A DNA stretch of 63,383 nucleotides, the filler included, from Octopus bimaculoides (lineage: Eukaryota), in assembly GCF_001194135.2 (NCBI RefSeq). It is 4 parts of 4 records of this genome, joined end to end, with 100 filler letters (N's around TTAATTAATTAA, not from the genome) between each part and the next. Parts side by side here need not be neighbours in the genome. Positions count along the whole stretch, not along the records: positions 19,983 to 40,041 come from NC_068982.1; 3 more parts are not named here. One strand, given 5' to 3'. A program made the position numbers and the translations under genes. Each line of letters starts with the position of its first letter. The stretch's first letter is position 1. Below the pieces are notes generated by a model. That model was not told the origin of the DNA. It did no database searches and saw only the letters and a list, made by a program, of their open reading frames with translations. Below are positions 23,851 through 36,918 of the stretch, piece after piece.

Positions 23851-24107
23851 CTGTTCCATATTGTCCATACATTGTCGACATCTACCACCATCTTGGGCTG
23901 CATTGTAGGCATAACATCCGCTGACAGACGTCGCTTCTTCCCAAGTTAGGTTCTTTAGAATACGTGTGTCCTGCCACGAACATACTTGCCATCCTGGACT
24001 ACAAAGAGAGCTACCATTTTCTATATGTCCATGCCAATAACCATTGCAAGCTGCCAGGTTGCTATGCCATTGAAATCCTTCGCTTGTATCGTCAGCACAA
24101 CCAACCT
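23851..24107 (-). CDS. Coding exon of a Cys/Trp-rich extracellular module: (E)VGCADDTSEGFQWHSNLAACNGYWHGHIENGSSLCSPGWQVCSWQDTRILKNLTWEEATSVSGCYAYNAAQDGGRCRQCMDNMEQ
   Basis: Canonical acceptor ttttgtcag|AG and donor GAACAG|GTAAAA. The 257 nt run phase 1 to phase 0 with an open frame. High-complexity sequence with 7 Cys, 5 Trp and two N-glycosylation sequons (NGS, NLT). Confidence 0.9.
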
Positions 24108-24115
24108 CTGACAAA

Positions 24116-24163
<48 letters not shown>

Positions 24164-24380
24164 TAATAATAATAACAATATACGTATATATTTATAGTGG
24201 GTTCCTTTTCGCCTAGTTGGATCTGTTCCATGAAAACATGCTGGAATCCCATTGATAAGAACACAGTGTATCTCCTCTCTCTCCCCTGCTCTCACATAAT
24301 GAACCAGAGCATATAAGACCGAGAACTCTGAGAAGTAAAATAACAACAATAGTAGTAGTAGTAGTGTTAGTAGTAGTAAT

Positions 24381-24411
<31 letters not shown>

Positions 24412-24425
24412 GCAGTAGCAGTAAC

Positions 24426-24468
<43 letters not shown>

Positions 24469-24599
24469 ATAGTAGTAGTAGTAGTAGTAACAATAATAAT
24501 TTCCTTTTTGCTACTAGGAGGAAATATTACAAATTGTACAAGGAATGATTACATGAATGGCGGTGTTCTTTGCAGAATTGAGAAAAAAAATGGCAAATA

Positions 24600-25692
24600 G
24601 ACATGGAAACAACAGTATAGTAAGAATGAAATGAGAGGTTCGAGGATGGGGCCAGCCACCAAGGAACAATAAAGGAATCTTGAAGATCCAGGATTTCTCT
24701 GACTACAAAGGGTAAACGTTCTCTTCTAGCAGTGTTCTCCAGCCTACTGACGTTTGTTGAAAGTAGGCTCCTCCAGGTGAACCACACTAACTCATTTTTC
24801 ATCAAATTATCTGGAATGCACAGTTTCTCTCCTCCTTTCGAACTGAAACTTGATGGAGGTGATGATGGCTTGACCGAATAGAAAAGTCCTTTCACTCTTA
24901 TCCAAAATACCATCTCTTTCACTATATCTGTCAGTCAGAGAAAACTGCTTGCCCTTCGGAAGTCCTCGTATTGATCCTCGTATTGGACTCGACTAATAAC
25001 CGGATCTGCCCAATACGCGGCAACGAGTTTTCCATGTAATTCTACAGTGCTAAGATACTGAGTGTTTTTGTAGTTCTGCACGAATCTCTAACAGGCCCTA
25101 ATGATGTCACTTTCATGTCTGCAGAATTTATCTCGAGCGGGCAGCGAATTTTTTTCCCCACGAGTGTTTCGGACTCCAGTTATGAACTCATTTGGATACA
25201 GCCAACCAGAGCTTAACTATCAAACTAATTTATGAGCGCATAACAAAGTGATGGGTGATAAGGTAACGTCACTTGGGTAAGGAATGACCATACTTCTTTT
25301 CTCTTTCAATAATGCTTGTTGTTCTTGTTAGGCATAATCTGAGAGCTGAACGGCACCGTTCCTTTCACACTTTTCAAACAATCCCTCAACGGTCTGCCAG
25401 CACCAATGCGGTTTCTGCCGCCAGCAACAACCTTTGTTAACTTGACAACAAGGTCACGGTGAGCTCTGATTGGCTGTATGCAAATGAGTTCATTACTGGA
25501 GTCCAGAACTCTCGTGGGAAAAAAAAATTCAGGATCGGGCAATGATTTCTTGTAGCATTACCAGGCCAATAATTTCTGGAAGTTGTCCATAGTTTCTAGA
25601 CTCAAGCTCTTTCGGAATATATTCTTCATTTGATATTCGTTGATGCCCAAAATCTCCTGAAAGAACTTCACACCGCTTTTGCCCAACAAAAT
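24600..25692 (-). mobile_element. Highly degraded RTE-like LINE 3' relic interrupted by an inverted-repeat element
   Basis: FFQEILGI / QRISNEEY in alternating frames and GGRNRIGAGRPLRDCLKSVK resemble the RTE 'RRILGI.W...ISNEE' and 'G.R.RGRP..W.D.VK' motifs. Confidence 0.35.
25146..25530. repeat. ~68-bp inverted repeat pair (MITE-like) enclosing ~250 bp; the right arm carries CCAAT and octamer motifs
   Basis: 25146-25213 is the reverse complement of 25462-25530 with a few mismatches. GATTGG is at 25468-73 and ATGCAAAT at 25478-85. Confidence 0.8.
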
Positions 25693-25835
25693 CTATTCAA
25701 TTCGGAATAATTATGTTTCTCGACCAAGGGAGATAAAATACAAACTCGACCAGGCGAGATTTGAATCCAGAATGTAAAGAGATGTAACGTTATAATATTT
25801 CCAATTTAGGTACAAACCCAATATTTGACATGAGT

Positions 25836-25871
<36 letters not shown>

Positions 25872-33553: not shown

Positions 33554-33600
<47 letters not shown>

Positions 33601-33714
33601 GTCCTAAACCAAATTACTATCTCCTATACAAATATATAAACACACGTACACGTGCATAAAAAGATTAGCGATCATACATAGACGCGTACACACATACACA
33701 CACCAACGCACAAG

Positions 33715-33805
<91 letters not shown>

Positions 33806-34783
33806 CGTATCTGGTTGTATGGCAATCATGTGAGTAAAGAAAAAGAAGCGGTGAATGTGATATGGATGTGTAATAGTGTATTTAGATGCTCCTAGGACTC
33901 TCATATTTATTATGGAAACTCTTAAAGTCTTCTTCTGTATGCAGTAATATGTATTTTCTTTGTAATATCATAATATTTATCCTTTGTTTCAACCTTGAAG
34001 GATGGATCTTTTCTGTTTCGCTGCCAATTTTCAATCTCTTCAATTTCTGTTCCAATTGATTTCATATTCGGTGTAATGATGTAGTTTTATATGCTCAAGT
34101 TATGAGAGGTTATATGCCGTGTGTAAAGCAGTTGATTTATTTAGTTTCATATTAAAACATGTGCTATTTTCAGAATGTTGACAACTAGTGCTGTCACGCA
34201 CAAAATGACAGCTTTCAAATCCTGTTTTCTGACTGGGTGAAAATGATCAAACTTTAAACCTCTATAATCTTTTTAAAACGTTTTCTGGAAAAAAAAAGTG
34301 AAATATCTCCTGAGATTCACCTTGGAAAACTACATTAATACACCAAATTTTAAAATTTCCTATAAACTTTGAAATTTCCACAGGTGCAGCCAAACAGAAA
34401 GGATCCTGAAAGGCTTACTCGGACAGATCGACACCAGTTCTTATTTTAAGCCTGGCGCTTATTCTATCGTCGACTTTTTCCGAACTGCTAAGTTACGAGA
34501 ACGTAAACAAACCAACATCAGTTTCAAGCGGTGGTGGAGGAACAAACACAANNNNNNNNNNNNNNNNNNNNNNNNNNNNNNNNNNNNNNNNNNNNNNNNN
34601 NNNNNNNNNNNNNNNNNNNNNNNNNNNNNNNNNNNNNNNNNNNNNNNNNNNNNNNNNNNNNNNNNNNNNNNNNNNNNNNNNNNNNNNNNNNNNNNNNNNN
34701 NNNNNNNNNNNNNNNNNNNNNNNNNNNNNNNNNNNNNNNNNNNNNNNNNNNNNNNNNNNNNNNNNNNNNNNNNNNNNNNNNNN

Positions 34784-34837
<54 letters not shown>

Positions 34838-35161
34838 AAGCAATGTAGTGATGGTGTTTATGAATATCAACAATGTGACAGACGGAAAATAGCTCAGCAG
34901 AATGTATTGTTTACTGAAAATTATTTCAGTAGTCGCACATGTGAATACATCTACCTACCCTCGTTTATCACGGATTTATTCTTTTATTTGTTTCAGTCAT
35001 TTGATTGCAGCCATGCTGGAGCATCGCTTTCAGTCAAACAAATCAACCCCAGGAATTATTCCTTGTAAGCCTGGTACTTATTCTATCGGTTTCTTTTGCC
35101 GAACCGCTATGTTACGGAGACATGAACACACCAACATCAATTGTCAAGCGATGGTGGAGAG

Positions 35162-35198
<37 letters not shown>

Positions 35199-36505
35199 NN
35201 NNNNNNNNNNNNNNNNNNNNNNNNNNNNNNNNNNNNNNNNNNNNNNNNNNNNNNNNNNNNNNNNNNNNNNNNNNNNNNNNNNNNNNNNNNNNNNNNNNNN
35301 NNNNNNNNNNNNNNNNNNNNNNNNNNNNNNNNNNNNNNNNNNNNNNNNNNNNNNNNNNNNNNNNNNNNNNNNNNNNNNNNNNNNNNNNNNNNNNNNNNNN
35401 NNNNNNNNNNNNNNNNNNNNNNNNNNNNNNNNNNNNNNNNNNNNNNNNNNNNNNNNNNNNNNNNNNNNNNNNNNNNNNNNNNNNNNNNNNNNNNNNNNNN
35501 NNNNNNNNNNNNNNNNNNNNNNNNNNNNNNNNNNNNNNNNNNNNNNNNNNNNNNNNNNNNNNNNNNNNNNNNNNNNNNNNNNNNNNNNNNNNNNNNNNNN
35601 NNNNNNNNNNNNNNNNNNNNNNNNNNNNNNNNNNNNNNNNNNNNNNNNNNNNNNNNNNNNNNNNNNNNNNNNNNNNNNNNNNNNNNNNNNNNNNNNNNNN
35701 NNNNNNNNNNNNNNNNNNNNNNNNNNNNNNNNNNNNNNNNNNNNNNNNNNNNNNNNNNNNNNNNNNNNNNNNNNNNNNNNNNNNNNNNNNNNNNNNNNNN
35801 NNNNNNNNNNNNNNNNNNNNNNNNNNNNNNNNNNNNNNNNNNNNNNNNNNNNNNNNNNNNNNNNNNNNNNNNNNNNNNNNNNNNNNNNNNNNNNNNNNNN
35901 NNNNNNNNNNNNNNNNNNNNNNNNNNNNNNNNNNNNNNNNNNNNNNNNNNNNNNNNNNNNNNNTGTGTGTGTGCGTGTGTGTGTGTGTGTGTGTGCGTGC
36001 GTGCGTGTGTGTGTGTGTGTGTGTGTGCGTGCGCGTAAAAAAAATCTCTGTATTATGTAGATATACCAATATAGGCACAGTTCAATGACGGAAACAATTA
36101 TACTCATACATACGAACACAATTATTCATGCATACATACATACATGCACATATATATATGTATATATCTAAGTACAGTGAGAGAGAGAGAGAGGGAGAGA
36201 GAGAGAGGGAGAGAGAGAGGGTGAGTGAGAAAGTGATATATAAACAGAGACTAAGTGCAGGTAAATAAGTATACATTCACACACATACATATTCACATAC
36301 GCACACTGCATCGTTCCTTACACACATGCACGGACGCACACACAAATACAAAAATAGATGGCTGGGTAACTGGATAATAGATGGTCAATTAAAGAGAAGA
36401 CAACGGCGATTTGAAGAAGCTAAATAAATCGATAGATAACTCATTAGTACTATAAATAACATTATACAACTATAAATAGCATTATAGAGAAATCGGCAGA
36501 TCACA

Positions 36506-36557
<52 letters not shown>

Positions 36558-36794
36558 TACGAAAAGCGGATCGTGGAGTTTTGAGAGTTGACAGTTTCGT
36601 TATTTCTGATTTAAAACTTCTGATAAGTACACGTTGTGTTTACTCTGTCCATGCTCGACATAGTAGATTGTTCACTGCAAAAAAAATTGTGACACTATAC
36701 TACTGTTAGAAGTGAAGATCCTGAAATGTAACGTAAGAGATGAAAATATTGCAAGAATTAATATTGAAAATGAAAATGAAATGTAAAACCTTAC

Positions 36795-36918
36795 CTGCCT
36801 TAGTTCCGTGAAAATACAAAAGGTGAAGAAAACAAAATGCAGGTAACACACCATTCAACTTCCGGTGTAAAACTTTCCATGGAGAGAACGATTGAGCATT
36901 GATGAAAAATGGCGACAT
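36795..36918 (-). CDS. Probable first coding exon (signal peptide) of a secreted/extracellular Cys-rich protein: MSPFFINAQSFSPWKVLHRKLNGVLPAFCFLHLLYFHGTKA(G)
   Basis: On the minus strand a long pyrimidine tract ends ttttccaag|G, placing the exon start at 36923. ATG is in an aaaATG context at 36918 and the donor is strong (GCAG|GTAAGG after 36795). The 124 nt end in phase 1, which matches the phase-1 acceptor at 24107. A hydrophobic core VLPAFCFLHLLYF is followed by TKA|E. Confidence 0.7.

What the first reader, a model, noticed from the sequence alone, without database searches (positions are those of the whole stretch)
23851..36918. Secreted protein beginning with an unnamed Cys/Trp-rich 'GCAD' module
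Seen: phase-compatible splicing across a 12.7-kb intron gives ...FCFLHLLYFHGTKA|EVGCADDTSEGFQWHSNLAACNGYWHGHIENGSSLCSPGWQVCSW..., so the module would start exactly at a predicted signal cleavage site. Seven Cys (an odd number) and the phase-0 end imply the domain continues in a further exon. From memory only, without a search: the pattern GCADG..EG...AAC.G.W...LC.PGW.VC occurs in uncharacterised invertebrate extracellular proteins, often with TSP1/Ig domains, and in some myxobacterial secreted proteins. I cannot assign a named family or function. This is the only clear host gene in the window and is a candidate novel extracellular adhesion or recognition module.
Basis: partly seen in the sequence, partly recalled or inferred. 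Interest (0 to 1): 0.7.

Follow-up and report, generated by a model that had tools for sequence, protein, structure and literature searches.

The report
Octopus secreted protein with unnamed cysteine-rich domain
The two exons are real and start an octopus gene for a secreted protein, and its first domain is a 145-residue cysteine-rich module found across invertebrates, one amoeba and myxobacteria that no domain database names and nobody has studied.

Summary
On the minus strand, exon 1 (36918-36795) and exon 2 (24107-23851) join in frame across a 12,687-nt intron. The joined 127-residue peptide matches the N-terminus of the annotated Octopus vulgaris protein 'hemicentin-1-like' (506 aa) at 124 of 127 residues, with no gap at the junction.

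The three assembly gaps all lie inside the intron, so reading frame is not at stake. Only the scaffold linkage of exon 1 depends on them.

Exon 2 encodes the first 86 residues of a module of about 145 residues and 14 cysteines. The rest of the module lies outside this piece. The orthologue family reads signal peptide, module, Ig I-set, module, then 3-4 tenascin/teneurin-type EGFs. It occurs in sponge, placozoan, priapulid, centipede, nematode, molluscs, annelids, a nemertean, echinoderms, hemichordates and tunicates.

The module also occurs alone or in other architectures in Myxococcota (236 confirmed loci) and in the amoeba Balamuthia. No Pfam, NCBIfam or PDB sequence match exists. An AlphaFold model is confident (pLDDT 93.6) but has no significant structural neighbour. 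The weak neighbours are almost all C-type lectin-like domains.

Function is untested. An extracellular binding scaffold is the best inference. The gene is already catalogued, but the domain family is undescribed.

The parts
36795..36918 (-). Exon 1, coding part. ATG at 36918-36916, 41 codons plus 1 base. Encodes MSPFFINAQSFSPWKVLHRKLNGVLPAFCFLHLLYFHGTKA. This reads as a signal peptide with a long n-region, the hydrophobic core VLPAFCFLHLLYF, and T at -3 and A at -1. The 5' UTR extent is unknown.
   Evidence: 39/41 identical to the N-terminus of O. vulgaris P0200. Only candidate in the first-exon scan. No SignalP was available, so the cleavage site is inferred.
36793..36794 (-). GT donor of intron 1 (GCAG|gtaagg), phase 1
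   Evidence: Donor score 7.4 bits with a simple metazoan matrix.
24108..36794 (-). Intron 1, 12,687 positions of which 1,148 are N. Filled with SINE-like copies, microsatellites and an uncharacterised ORF (27660-27980, no Pfam match; a LINE-derived fragment from memory only).
   Evidence: The orthologue has no residues between the two exons, so no coding exon is hidden in the gaps.
29917..30067 (.). Assembly gap 1, inside one SINE-like copy. The flanks are colinear.
   Evidence: Left flank matches SINE positions 1-87 and right flank positions 219-412, in the same orientation. 131 nt are missing against 151 N.
34552..34783 (.). Assembly gap 2, within the (CA)n tract of a SINE-like copy
35199..35963 (.). 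Assembly gap 3. (CA)n on the left and (TG)n on the right, so continuity is not demonstrable. It separates the exon 1 island from the rest.
24108..24109 (-). AG acceptor of intron 1 (tattttgtcag|AGGTTGG), preceded by an (ATT)n tract at 24118-24180
23851..24107 (-). Exon 2, 257 nt. Encodes (E)VGCADDTSEGFQWHSNLAACNGYWHGHIENGSSLCSPGWQVCSWQDTRILKNLTWEEATSVSGCYAYNAAQDGGRCRQCMDNMEQ. This is the first 86 residues of the roughly 145-residue module.
23849..23850 (-). GT donor of intron 2 (GAACAG|gtaaaag), phase 0. The intron position is conserved across animals.
   Evidence: 23 short database ORFs from other animals run ...E(Q/H/K/E)V... and then diverge at exactly this point, as expected for read-through into a GT donor. 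The next exon is not in 19983-23850.

Best explanation
These are the first two coding exons of the octopus orthologue of an old, conserved and uncharacterised animal gene. RefSeq calls the O. vulgaris copy 'hemicentin-1-like'.

**The protein.** It has about 500-570 residues and no predicted membrane anchor. Its order is signal peptide, cysteine-rich module 1, one Ig I-set domain, cysteine-rich module 2, then three to four tenascin/teneurin-type EGF repeats. Exon 1 supplies the signal peptide. Exon 2 supplies the N-terminal 86 residues of module 1. The remaining roughly 60 residues of the module and the rest of the gene lie beyond the piece.

**The module.** It is an autonomous alpha/beta domain of about 145 residues, with 14 Cys in module 1 and about 12 in module 2, presumably held together by disulfides. 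The columns conserved in at least 90% of sequences are only Cys, Gly, Trp, Val and Ala, that is, structural residues. No catalytic-type residue reaches that level, and the His of the GH(V/I) motif is kept mainly in animals. It also occurs as the sole domain of a Myxococcota lipoprotein-like ORF and at the ends of large secreted bacterial proteins.

**Most likely mechanism (inferred, about 35-40%).** The module is a rigid extracellular binding scaffold for a protein or glycan ligand. The animal protein would present two such heads, separated by an Ig domain and carried on an EGF stalk. It would then act as a secreted bivalent matrix or cell-surface cross-linker or recognition factor.

**Shown:** the gene structure, the orthology, the domain boundaries and autonomy, the confident fold model, and the taxonomic spread.

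**Inferred:** signal cleavage, the disulfides, and any binding function.
For: **Gene structure and orthology**
- Splice and frame.
- 124/127 identity, gapless, to P0200 residues 1-127.
- P0200 architecture is Ig I-set at 187-275 and EGF_TEN at 394-496, with nothing in Pfam over residues 42-186.
- The same architecture appears in Priapulus, Strigamia, Mizuhopecten, Acanthaster, Liolophura and unnamed metagenome or read-assembly proteins, and in about 40 further named orthologues. Orthologues from Styela, Saccoglossus, Sycon and Soboliphyme were identified by name only.

**The module**
- Its extent was defined by alignment of animal and bacterial copies.
- Invariant residues are C6 C23 G25 C38 W42 C45 C67 C79 C82, and all are present in the window exon.
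- The AlphaFold2 model of the full module, built on a 37-sequence alignment, has pLDDT 93.6 and pTM 0.90.

**Secreted context**
- Orthologue N-termini carry hydrophobic leaders ending 2-4 residues before the GC motif.
- A Kofleriaceae ORF has a lipoprotein-type leader, then acidic repeats, then the module.
- Bacterial partner domains are FN3, LamG_3, Dicty_CTDC, MopE, TSP_3 and myxo_disulf_rpt.
- 236 tblastn-confirmed loci were found, and nearly all the listed ones are from Myxococcota.
Against: - No experiment or paper bears on function.
- No transcript data were available for this genome, and the O. vulgaris model is a predicted protein.
- No signal-peptide predictor was available. The leader has a long, charged n-region and two His residues in its core.
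- Exon 1 lies on a scaffold island bounded by gaps.
- One bacterial protein couples the module to a STAND NTPase and WD40 repeats. That is not an obviously extracellular context.
- No acidic or polar ligand-binding residue is conserved at 90% or more, so nothing points to a particular ligand.
Confidence: 0.78

Rival explanations
1. The module is a very divergent C-type lectin-like domain (CTLD/CLec fold). It would work like one, through loop-mediated glycan or protein binding, possibly needing Ca2+.
For: - Almost all of the weak Foldseek neighbours are CTLDs. In PDB these include CD23, CEL-I, KLRG1, CLEC5A, CD69, the mannose receptor and the DGR variable protein TaqVP. Most of the top BFVD neighbours are viral C-type lectins.
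- The secondary-structure order of the model (beta, alpha, beta, alpha, alpha, beta, then four short strands) can be laid over the CTLD beta1-alpha1-alpha2-beta2...beta5 order. This overlay is my inference.
- The stretch LC..GW.VCS..D...L resembles the CTLD alpha1-to-beta region. That resemblance is from memory.
Against: - No Foldseek hit is better than E=1.6, and TM-scores are 0.16-0.37 despite a confident model.
- No Lectin_C match appears in any of 37 module sequences at E<=1, nor in whole proteins.
- The profile search of PDB sequences was empty.
- 14 Cys is far more than the four canonical CTLD cysteines.
Confidence: 0.3
2. The module is a fold of its own, with no relation to known superfamilies. 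The lectin-like hits are noise from a common beta-alpha-alpha-beta local motif.
For: - The model is confident (pTM 0.90), yet there are zero matches at E<=0.001 among 350,542 PDB chains and in BFVD.
- No sequence-profile match to PDB, Pfam or NCBIfam.
Against: - The consistency of the weak hits, which are nearly all CTLDs, is unlikely for pure noise.
- AFDB, ECOD and CATH could not be searched here.
Confidence: 0.4
3. The exon 1 to exon 2 join is an accident. The ATG/hydrophobic ORF at 36918-36795 would be a chance ORF or belong to another gene, and the real first exon would lie elsewhere, possibly in a gap or outside the piece.
For: - Similar ATG/hydrophobic/donor candidates arise at about 0.8 per strand and phase per 20 kb.
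- Exon 1 sits on an island between gaps 3 and 4, and continuity across gap 3 cannot be shown.
Against: - 39/41 residues of exon 1 and the exact junction are reproduced in the O. vulgaris protein model.
- It is the best and only candidate on the right strand and phase upstream.
- The leader length (Met to GC = 43 residues) lies within the orthologue range of 29-61.
Confidence: 0.03
4. Exon 2 is a decayed or recently transferred bacterial fragment, or contamination, rather than part of a working animal gene.
For: The module is abundant in Myxococcota. The best bacterial copy is 47% identical to the exon.
Against: - Exon 2 has an open frame with canonical splice sites and keeps all invariant residues.
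- Its G+C is about 0.38-0.41, like its surroundings.
- It is embedded among octopus-type SINE copies.
- Orthologues with the same intron position occur across animals.
- In a rough NJ tree the octopus module 1 groups with other mollusc and spiralian module 1 copies.
Confidence: 0.02

Closest known systems
Octopus vulgaris 'hemicentin-1-like' (P0200, 506 aa) and its orthologues, for example Liolophura LOC135468071, Acanthaster LOC110977079, Strongylocentrotus LOC100893885, Saccoglossus LOC102800875, Styela LOC120328109 and Priapulus XP_014671248
   Same: - 98% identical over the 127 residues encoded here.
- Same leader-then-module start.
- Same phase-0 intron position after ...CxxC...EQ.
   Different: - Three substitutions (F4S, F28L, Q82R), so the window comes from another individual or a close sister species.
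- Only the first quarter of the gene lies in this piece.
- All these entries are predictions carrying automatic and mutually inconsistent names.
True hemicentin (fibulin-6)
   Same: It is secreted and contains Ig I-set and EGF domains. That is why the annotation pipeline borrowed the name.
   Different: - Hemicentins are proteins of more than 5,000 residues with a VWA domain, more than 40 Ig domains, G2F and a fibulin-type C-terminus (my knowledge).
- The octopus orthologue has 506 residues with one Ig and about three EGFs, and Pfam finds no VWA or G2F.
- Hemicentins are not known to carry this module (my knowledge; not searched here).
C-type lectin-like domains (Pfam Lectin_C; CLec fold, including the DGR variable proteins)
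   Same: - Similar size.
- Extracellular, disulfide-stabilised alpha/beta domain.
- The only fold class that recurs among the weak structural neighbours.
   Different: - No significant sequence, profile or structural match.
- 12-14 Cys instead of 4-6.
- No WIGL or EPN/WND motifs were noticed by eye.
Cysteine-rich repeats of myxobacteria (TIGR02232 myxo_disulf_rpt / DUF4215) and Dicty_CTDC repeats
   Same: They are cysteine-rich extracellular elements of Myxococcota proteins, and they co-occur with the module in some proteins.
   Different: They are short repeats of 24-38 residues. The module itself does not match them.
Teneurin: an animal extracellular protein family with bacterial relatives
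   Same: A precedent for the same pattern, an animal extracellular protein family with bacterial relatives (PMC13018210, PMC3278476, from titles and abstracts seen). The EGF repeats of the orthologue match the teneurin EGF model.
   Different: This is a different domain. No YD shell or toxin part is involved, and the direction of any transfer is unresolved here.

Membership tests
Orthologous group: leader, module, Ig, module, EGFs ('hemicentin-1-like' of O. vulgaris) | An N-terminal hydrophobic leader followed within 2-4 residues by the GC.DG motif | tested here: met
   Window peptide ...HGTKA|EVGCADD. Orthologue N-termini are listed. 124/127 identity to P0200.
Orthologous group: leader, module, Ig, module, EGFs ('hemicentin-1-like' of O. 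vulgaris) | Invariant module residues (C6 C23 G25 C38 W42 C45 C67 C79 C82 of alignment A1) | tested here: met
   All are present in exon 2 (read against the sequence).
Orthologous group: leader, module, Ig, module, EGFs ('hemicentin-1-like' of O. vulgaris) | Second half of module 1, then Ig I-set, module 2 and EGF repeats downstream | not testable with these tools
   No further exon lies in 19983-23850, so the gene continues beyond the piece. These parts are present in the O. vulgaris orthologue.
Orthologous group: leader, module, Ig, module, EGFs ('hemicentin-1-like' of O. vulgaris) | A phase-0 intron directly after the CxxC...E(Q) segment | tested here: met
   GAACAG|gtaaaag at 23851/23850. 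23 short ORFs from other animals read through as ...EQV... at the same point. This second line of evidence is indirect.
Hemicentin (fibulin-6) | VWA domain, long Ig array, G2F and fibulin C-terminal module | tested here: not met
   Pfam on P0200 finds one Ig and EGF_TEN/EGF only, in 506 aa.
C-type lectin-like domain | Match to the Lectin_C profile or to a CTLD sequence | tested here: not met
   No match. hhalign against a DC-SIGN CRD gave 0.2% probability. The PDB profile search was empty.
C-type lectin-like domain | CTLD fold (a significant structural superposition) | tested here: inconclusive
   The weak Foldseek hits in PDB are almost all CTLDs, and most of the top BFVD hits are C-type lectins, but E>=1.6 and TM is 0.16-0.37.
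C-type lectin-like domain | Ca2+-dependent or loop-mediated ligand binding | not testable with these tools
   This needs protein and binding assays.
Myxococcus cysteine-rich repeat (TIGR02232) | Match to the repeat model | tested here: not met
   The model hits only a separate region of P0050 (residues 247-276), not the module.

The most novel reading that the evidence does not exclude
The 145-residue, 14-cysteine module is a protein domain family, and possibly a fold, that has never been described. On this reading it passed between Myxococcota and early eukaryotes, since it is present in sponges, placozoans, most invertebrate phyla and the amoeba Balamuthia. No vertebrate or insect protein with the module was seen among the named hits. 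In animals it would form the paired binding heads of an ancient secreted Ig/EGF protein whose ligand and role are unknown.
Probability: 0.45. Interest if true: 0.6.

Novelty: new variant of a known kind. Interest (0 to 1): 0.45.

Why it matters
For this window, the result turns an ab initio guess into a verified gene start. It also shows that the rest of the gene must be sought beyond the piece.

More broadly, it flags a compact disulfide-rich extracellular domain with three notable properties:
- It models with high confidence.
- It has no named family and no significant structural neighbour.
- Its distribution is patchy, covering Myxococcota, Amoebozoa and Metazoa.

Domains shared between social, predatory bacteria and early animals bear on how the animal extracellular toolkit was assembled.

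The animal protein is widespread. It appears in sponge, placozoan, spiralians, echinoderms, hemichordates and tunicates, yet no vertebrate, insect or Caenorhabditis copy was seen among the named hits. That may be why nobody has studied it. Its automatic names (hemicentin, titin, notch, VWDE, delta-like) are misleading and would benefit from a proper family definition.

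Tried and rejected
1. **Pfam and PDB sequence searches with the window peptide.** Nothing was found.
2. **Word-indexed homologue search with exon 2.** It found no candidate. This was a false negative of that tool, because a 98% identical O. vulgaris protein is in the collection. A second run with the 37-module alignment returned only 6 proteins.
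3. **Single-sequence AlphaFold of exon 2.** pLDDT was 44, so the model was unusable and was not searched.
4. **Search for the next exon.** Stop-to-stop frames and tblastn with eight orthologues over 19983-23850 found none.
5. **The search for related loci with the broad alignment.** It was redone with a bacterial sub-alignment.
6. **NCBIfam and Pfam on bacterial and animal members, and on all 37 module sequences.** No family covers the module.
7. **hhalign of the family profile against one CTLD sequence.** Negative.
8. **Contig look-up for P0200.** Not on record, so the O. vulgaris intron and remaining exons could not be compared.
9. **Literature.** Searches by topic and by 12 orthologue identifiers found nothing on the family.
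10. **Rough NJ tree of modules.** Module 2 copies form their own clade. Myxococcota and Balamuthia copies sit nearer animal module 1. There are no support values, so I draw no conclusion on the direction of transfer.
11. **Ca2+-binding idea.** Dropped, because no acidic column reaches 90% conservation.

Full report
**1. Observation**

The feature is on the minus strand.
- An ATG at 36918-36916, with A at -3, opens 41 codons plus one base. The peptide is MSPFFINAQSFSPWKVLHRKLNGVLPAFCFLHLLYFHGTKA, and it ends at 36795 in front of GCAG|gtaagg.
- After ttgtcag| at 24108, a 257-nt exon runs from 24107 to 23851 and ends in front of |gtaaaag.
- The single base from exon 1 plus AG from exon 2 forms a Glu codon. 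The join therefore gives ...HGTKA-EVGCADDTSEGFQWHSNLAACNGYWHGHIENGSSLCSPGWQVCSWQDTRILKNLTWEEATSVSGCYAYNAAQDGGRCRQCMDNMEQ.
- Exon 2 has 7 Cys and 5 Trp in 86 residues and ends in phase 0.

**2. The assembly gaps, tested first as requested**

The three gaps named in the finding (29917-30067, 34552-34783, 35199-35963) all lie inside the 12,687-position intron (24108-36794). No reading frame crosses a gap.

I mapped a SINE-like element of about 420 nt that litters the region.
- Gap 1 interrupts a single copy. The left flank matches element positions 1-87 and the right flank positions 219-412, in the same orientation. 131 nt are missing against 151 N, so the flanks are continuous.
- Gap 2 falls in the element's internal (CA)n tract.
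- Gap 3 has (CA)n on its left and (TG)n on its right. Continuity there cannot be shown.

Exon 1 therefore sits on a 2.47-kb island (35964-38433) that was placed by scaffolding. The intron length is only an estimate.

**3. Is it more than chance?**

Exon 2 certainly is.
- An exhaustive phmmer search of 1.84 billion representative proteins gave 191 hits at E<=1e-3, 83 at E<=1e-10 and a best hit of 1.7e-48.
- tblastn of eight of these proteins back onto the piece hits only this exon, at E 1e-13 to 1e-31. The alignments stop at the exon's end.

Exon 1 on its own is weak evidence.
- A scan for ATG, a hydrophobic core and a phase-1 GT donor finds it as the only candidate upstream on this strand, with the best donor score of 7.4 bits.
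- However, such candidates arise at about 0.8 per strand and phase per 20 kb.

The decisive evidence came from a profile search with full-length orthologues.
- It returned 'hemicentin-1-like [Octopus vulgaris]' (P0200, 506 aa).
- Its first 127 residues match the joined window peptide at 124 positions, with no gap at the junction.
- The three differences (F4S, F28L, Q82R) indicate a close sister species or a different individual. I cannot tell which.
- From memory, the SINE looks like the abundant octopus SINE.

**4. What the gene is**

P0200 reads as follows.
- A leader at residues 1-41.
- A stretch at 42-186 that is not in Pfam.
- An Ig I-set domain at 187-275.
- A second stretch that is not in Pfam.
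- Teneurin/tenascin-type EGF repeats at 394-496.
- I saw no hydrophobic stretch near the C-terminus (by eye; no transmembrane predictor was available).

The same layout recurs in Priapulus, Strigamia, Mizuhopecten, Acanthaster and Liolophura. Orthologues named come from Styela, Saccoglossus, Sycon, Soboliphyme and Ciona. It also recurs in about 40 further molluscs, annelids, a nemertean, echinoderms and hemichordates, and a Trichoplax fragment also matches.

Source names are automatic and inconsistent. They include hemicentin-1-like, Titin, notch 1-like, VWDE, delta-like 4 and adhesive plaque matrix protein 2-like.

In the orthologues the GC.DG motif starts 29-61 residues from the Met, 2-4 residues after a hydrophobic leader.

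**5. The module**

I aligned animal and bacterial copies, each with 85 residues of downstream sequence. The unit is about 145 residues long:

GC.DGT.EG...(i)AAC.G.W.GH(v)....LC..GW.VC.......L..i.w..A....GC(y)A(y)NAA.D...C..C.....DD(m)AG.G..C.......SC...GRID(a.CC).......C.y..G..tGV.CC

- The window exon is its first 86 residues.
- The O. vulgaris module 1 has 14 Cys.
- The exon boundary after ...MEQ is conserved. 23 short database ORFs from other animals run ...E(Q/H/K/E)V... and then diverge, as expected for read-through into a GT donor.
- Invariant or nearly invariant columns are Cys, Gly, Trp, Val and Ala only. That pattern fits a structural scaffold rather than an enzyme.

**6. Is the module named anywhere?**

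- No Pfam-A family matches it in the window peptide or in whole orthologues.
- None of the 37 isolated modules matches at E<=1.
- No NCBIfam model covers it.
- No PDB sequence matches the single sequence or the profile.
- Literature searches by topic and by 12 orthologue identifiers found nothing.

**7. Fold**

AlphaFold2 on the single exon failed, with pLDDT 44.

On the 37-sequence alignment of full modules, using Acanthaster module 1 as the target, it gave pLDDT 93.6 and pTM 0.90. The model is an alpha/beta arrangement with strands at 20-24, 42-44, 68-73, 91-94, 100-102, 113-115 and 139-144, and helices at 31-37, 47-53, 58-63 and 119-122.

Foldseek found no match at E<=0.001 in PDB or BFVD. 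The best E-value was 1.6 and TM-scores were 0.16-0.37.

Even so, almost all the weak PDB hits are C-type lectin-like domains. Most of the top BFVD hits are viral C-type lectins.

hhalign against one CTLD sequence was negative.

I therefore treat 'divergent lectin-like fold' as a lead at about 30%. 'Fold of its own' is about as likely, at roughly 40%.

**8. Beyond animals**

Many hits are long proteins with the module at one end, next to Dicty_CTDC repeats, LamG_3, MopE, TSP type-3, FN3 or myxo_disulf_rpt. In one case the partner is a STAND NTPase with WD40 repeats.

One is named as a Deltaproteobacteria MAG protein. Another is 'Tenascin' of the amoeba Balamuthia mandrillaris.

A scan of one genome per bacterial and archaeal species found 236 tblastn-confirmed loci. 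The 79 listed are almost all Myxococcota, including Myxococcus, Archangium, Polyangia, Kofleriaceae and Labilithrix.

In a Kofleriaceae locus the module is the only recognisable domain I found by reading a 300-residue ORF that has a lipoprotein-type leader and acidic repeats. The module is thus autonomous and appears mostly in secreted or surface proteins.

Bacterial copies share the extra Cys pair (DA(S/A)CC) with animal module 1, whereas module 2 lacks it. A rough NJ tree places the Myxococcota and Balamuthia copies nearer module 1. There are no support values, so I draw no conclusion on the direction of transfer.

**9. How it most likely works**

Shown:
- the gene start and the orthology;
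- the module boundaries and autonomy;
- a confident compact model;
- an extracellular context.

Inferred:
- the leader is cleaved after ...GTKA;
- the 14 Cys form seven disulfides;
- the module is a rigid binding scaffold;
- the animal protein displays two such heads on an Ig spacer and an EGF stalk, acting as a secreted bivalent cross-linker or recognition factor.

I put about 35-40% on the binding-scaffold mechanism and about 95% on the gene-structure part.

**10. Verdict**

- No TSP1 partner was seen.
- Predicted orthologues already exist in RefSeq.
- A second partial ORF lies in the piece.

As a locus it is ordinary, being the 5' end of a catalogued gene. As a domain it is an undescribed family with an unusual distribution. 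That is worth a family definition and a structure, but it is not a new kind of system.

Noticed in passing
window 37683-37756 (+): tRNA-Thr (anticodon CGT) called by ARAGORN and by Rfam, at 30.9 bits against a gathering score of 29. It lies about 0.77 kb upstream of exon 1 on the opposite strand. It could be a real tRNA gene or a tRNA-derived repeat head.
   Followed up: partly
window 39414-40041 (+): An open frame of at least 209 codons, cut off by the piece's edge. It has a weak Myb/SANT-like match at residues 4-62 and a CCCH zinc finger at 152-179. It may be a second gene or a domesticated or transposon-borne ORF.
   Followed up: partly
window 23432-23780, 26513-26667, 28092-28316, 29830-30257, 31380-31800, 34416-34550, 34980-35196: Seven copies or fragments of one SINE-like element of about 420 nt with an internal (CA)n/(TA)n tract. 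The three intron gaps all fall at or in this tract, which explains why the assembly broke there.
   Followed up: yes
window 27660-27980 (-): An ORF (MQFNVGKFQALHNQ...) inside the intron, adjoined by a second ORF at 27503-27721 that contains ...RRRERYAIIYTWK.... From memory this second ORF resembles the C-terminal part of LINE reverse transcriptases. Pfam gave no match to the 27660-27980 ORF; the second ORF was not scanned.
   Followed up: partly
window 24118-24180 and 24350-24489: Long trinucleotide microsatellites, (ATT)n and (CTA/TAG)n, lie directly upstream of the exon 2 acceptor. The (ATT)n tract supplies its pyrimidine-rich run.
   Followed up: no
P0200 (O. vulgaris orthologue), residues about 330-340: The annotated O. 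vulgaris protein lacks about 27 residues of module 2, namely the W.D....GCYAYNAA...CxxC segment that is present in all other orthologues. This is probably a skipped exon in that gene model.
   Followed up: partly
C-termini of orthologues P0170-P0203: Mollusc, annelid and related orthologues end in a conserved ...L(S/T)xLNRTER motif, which carries an N-glycosylation sequon at the very C-terminus. Other phyla have looser variants (NNTTR, FDTVR, NRTEQ). Its meaning is unknown.
   Followed up: no
tool behaviour: The word-indexed homologue search reported no candidate for exon 2, although a 98% identical protein is in the same collection. Negative results from that tool should not be read as absence.
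   Followed up: yes
P0110 (1586 aa, metagenome): One protein carries the module at the C-terminus of a STAND NTPase with WD40 repeats. That architecture is usually cytoplasmic and is odd for a 12-14-Cys domain.
   Followed up: no
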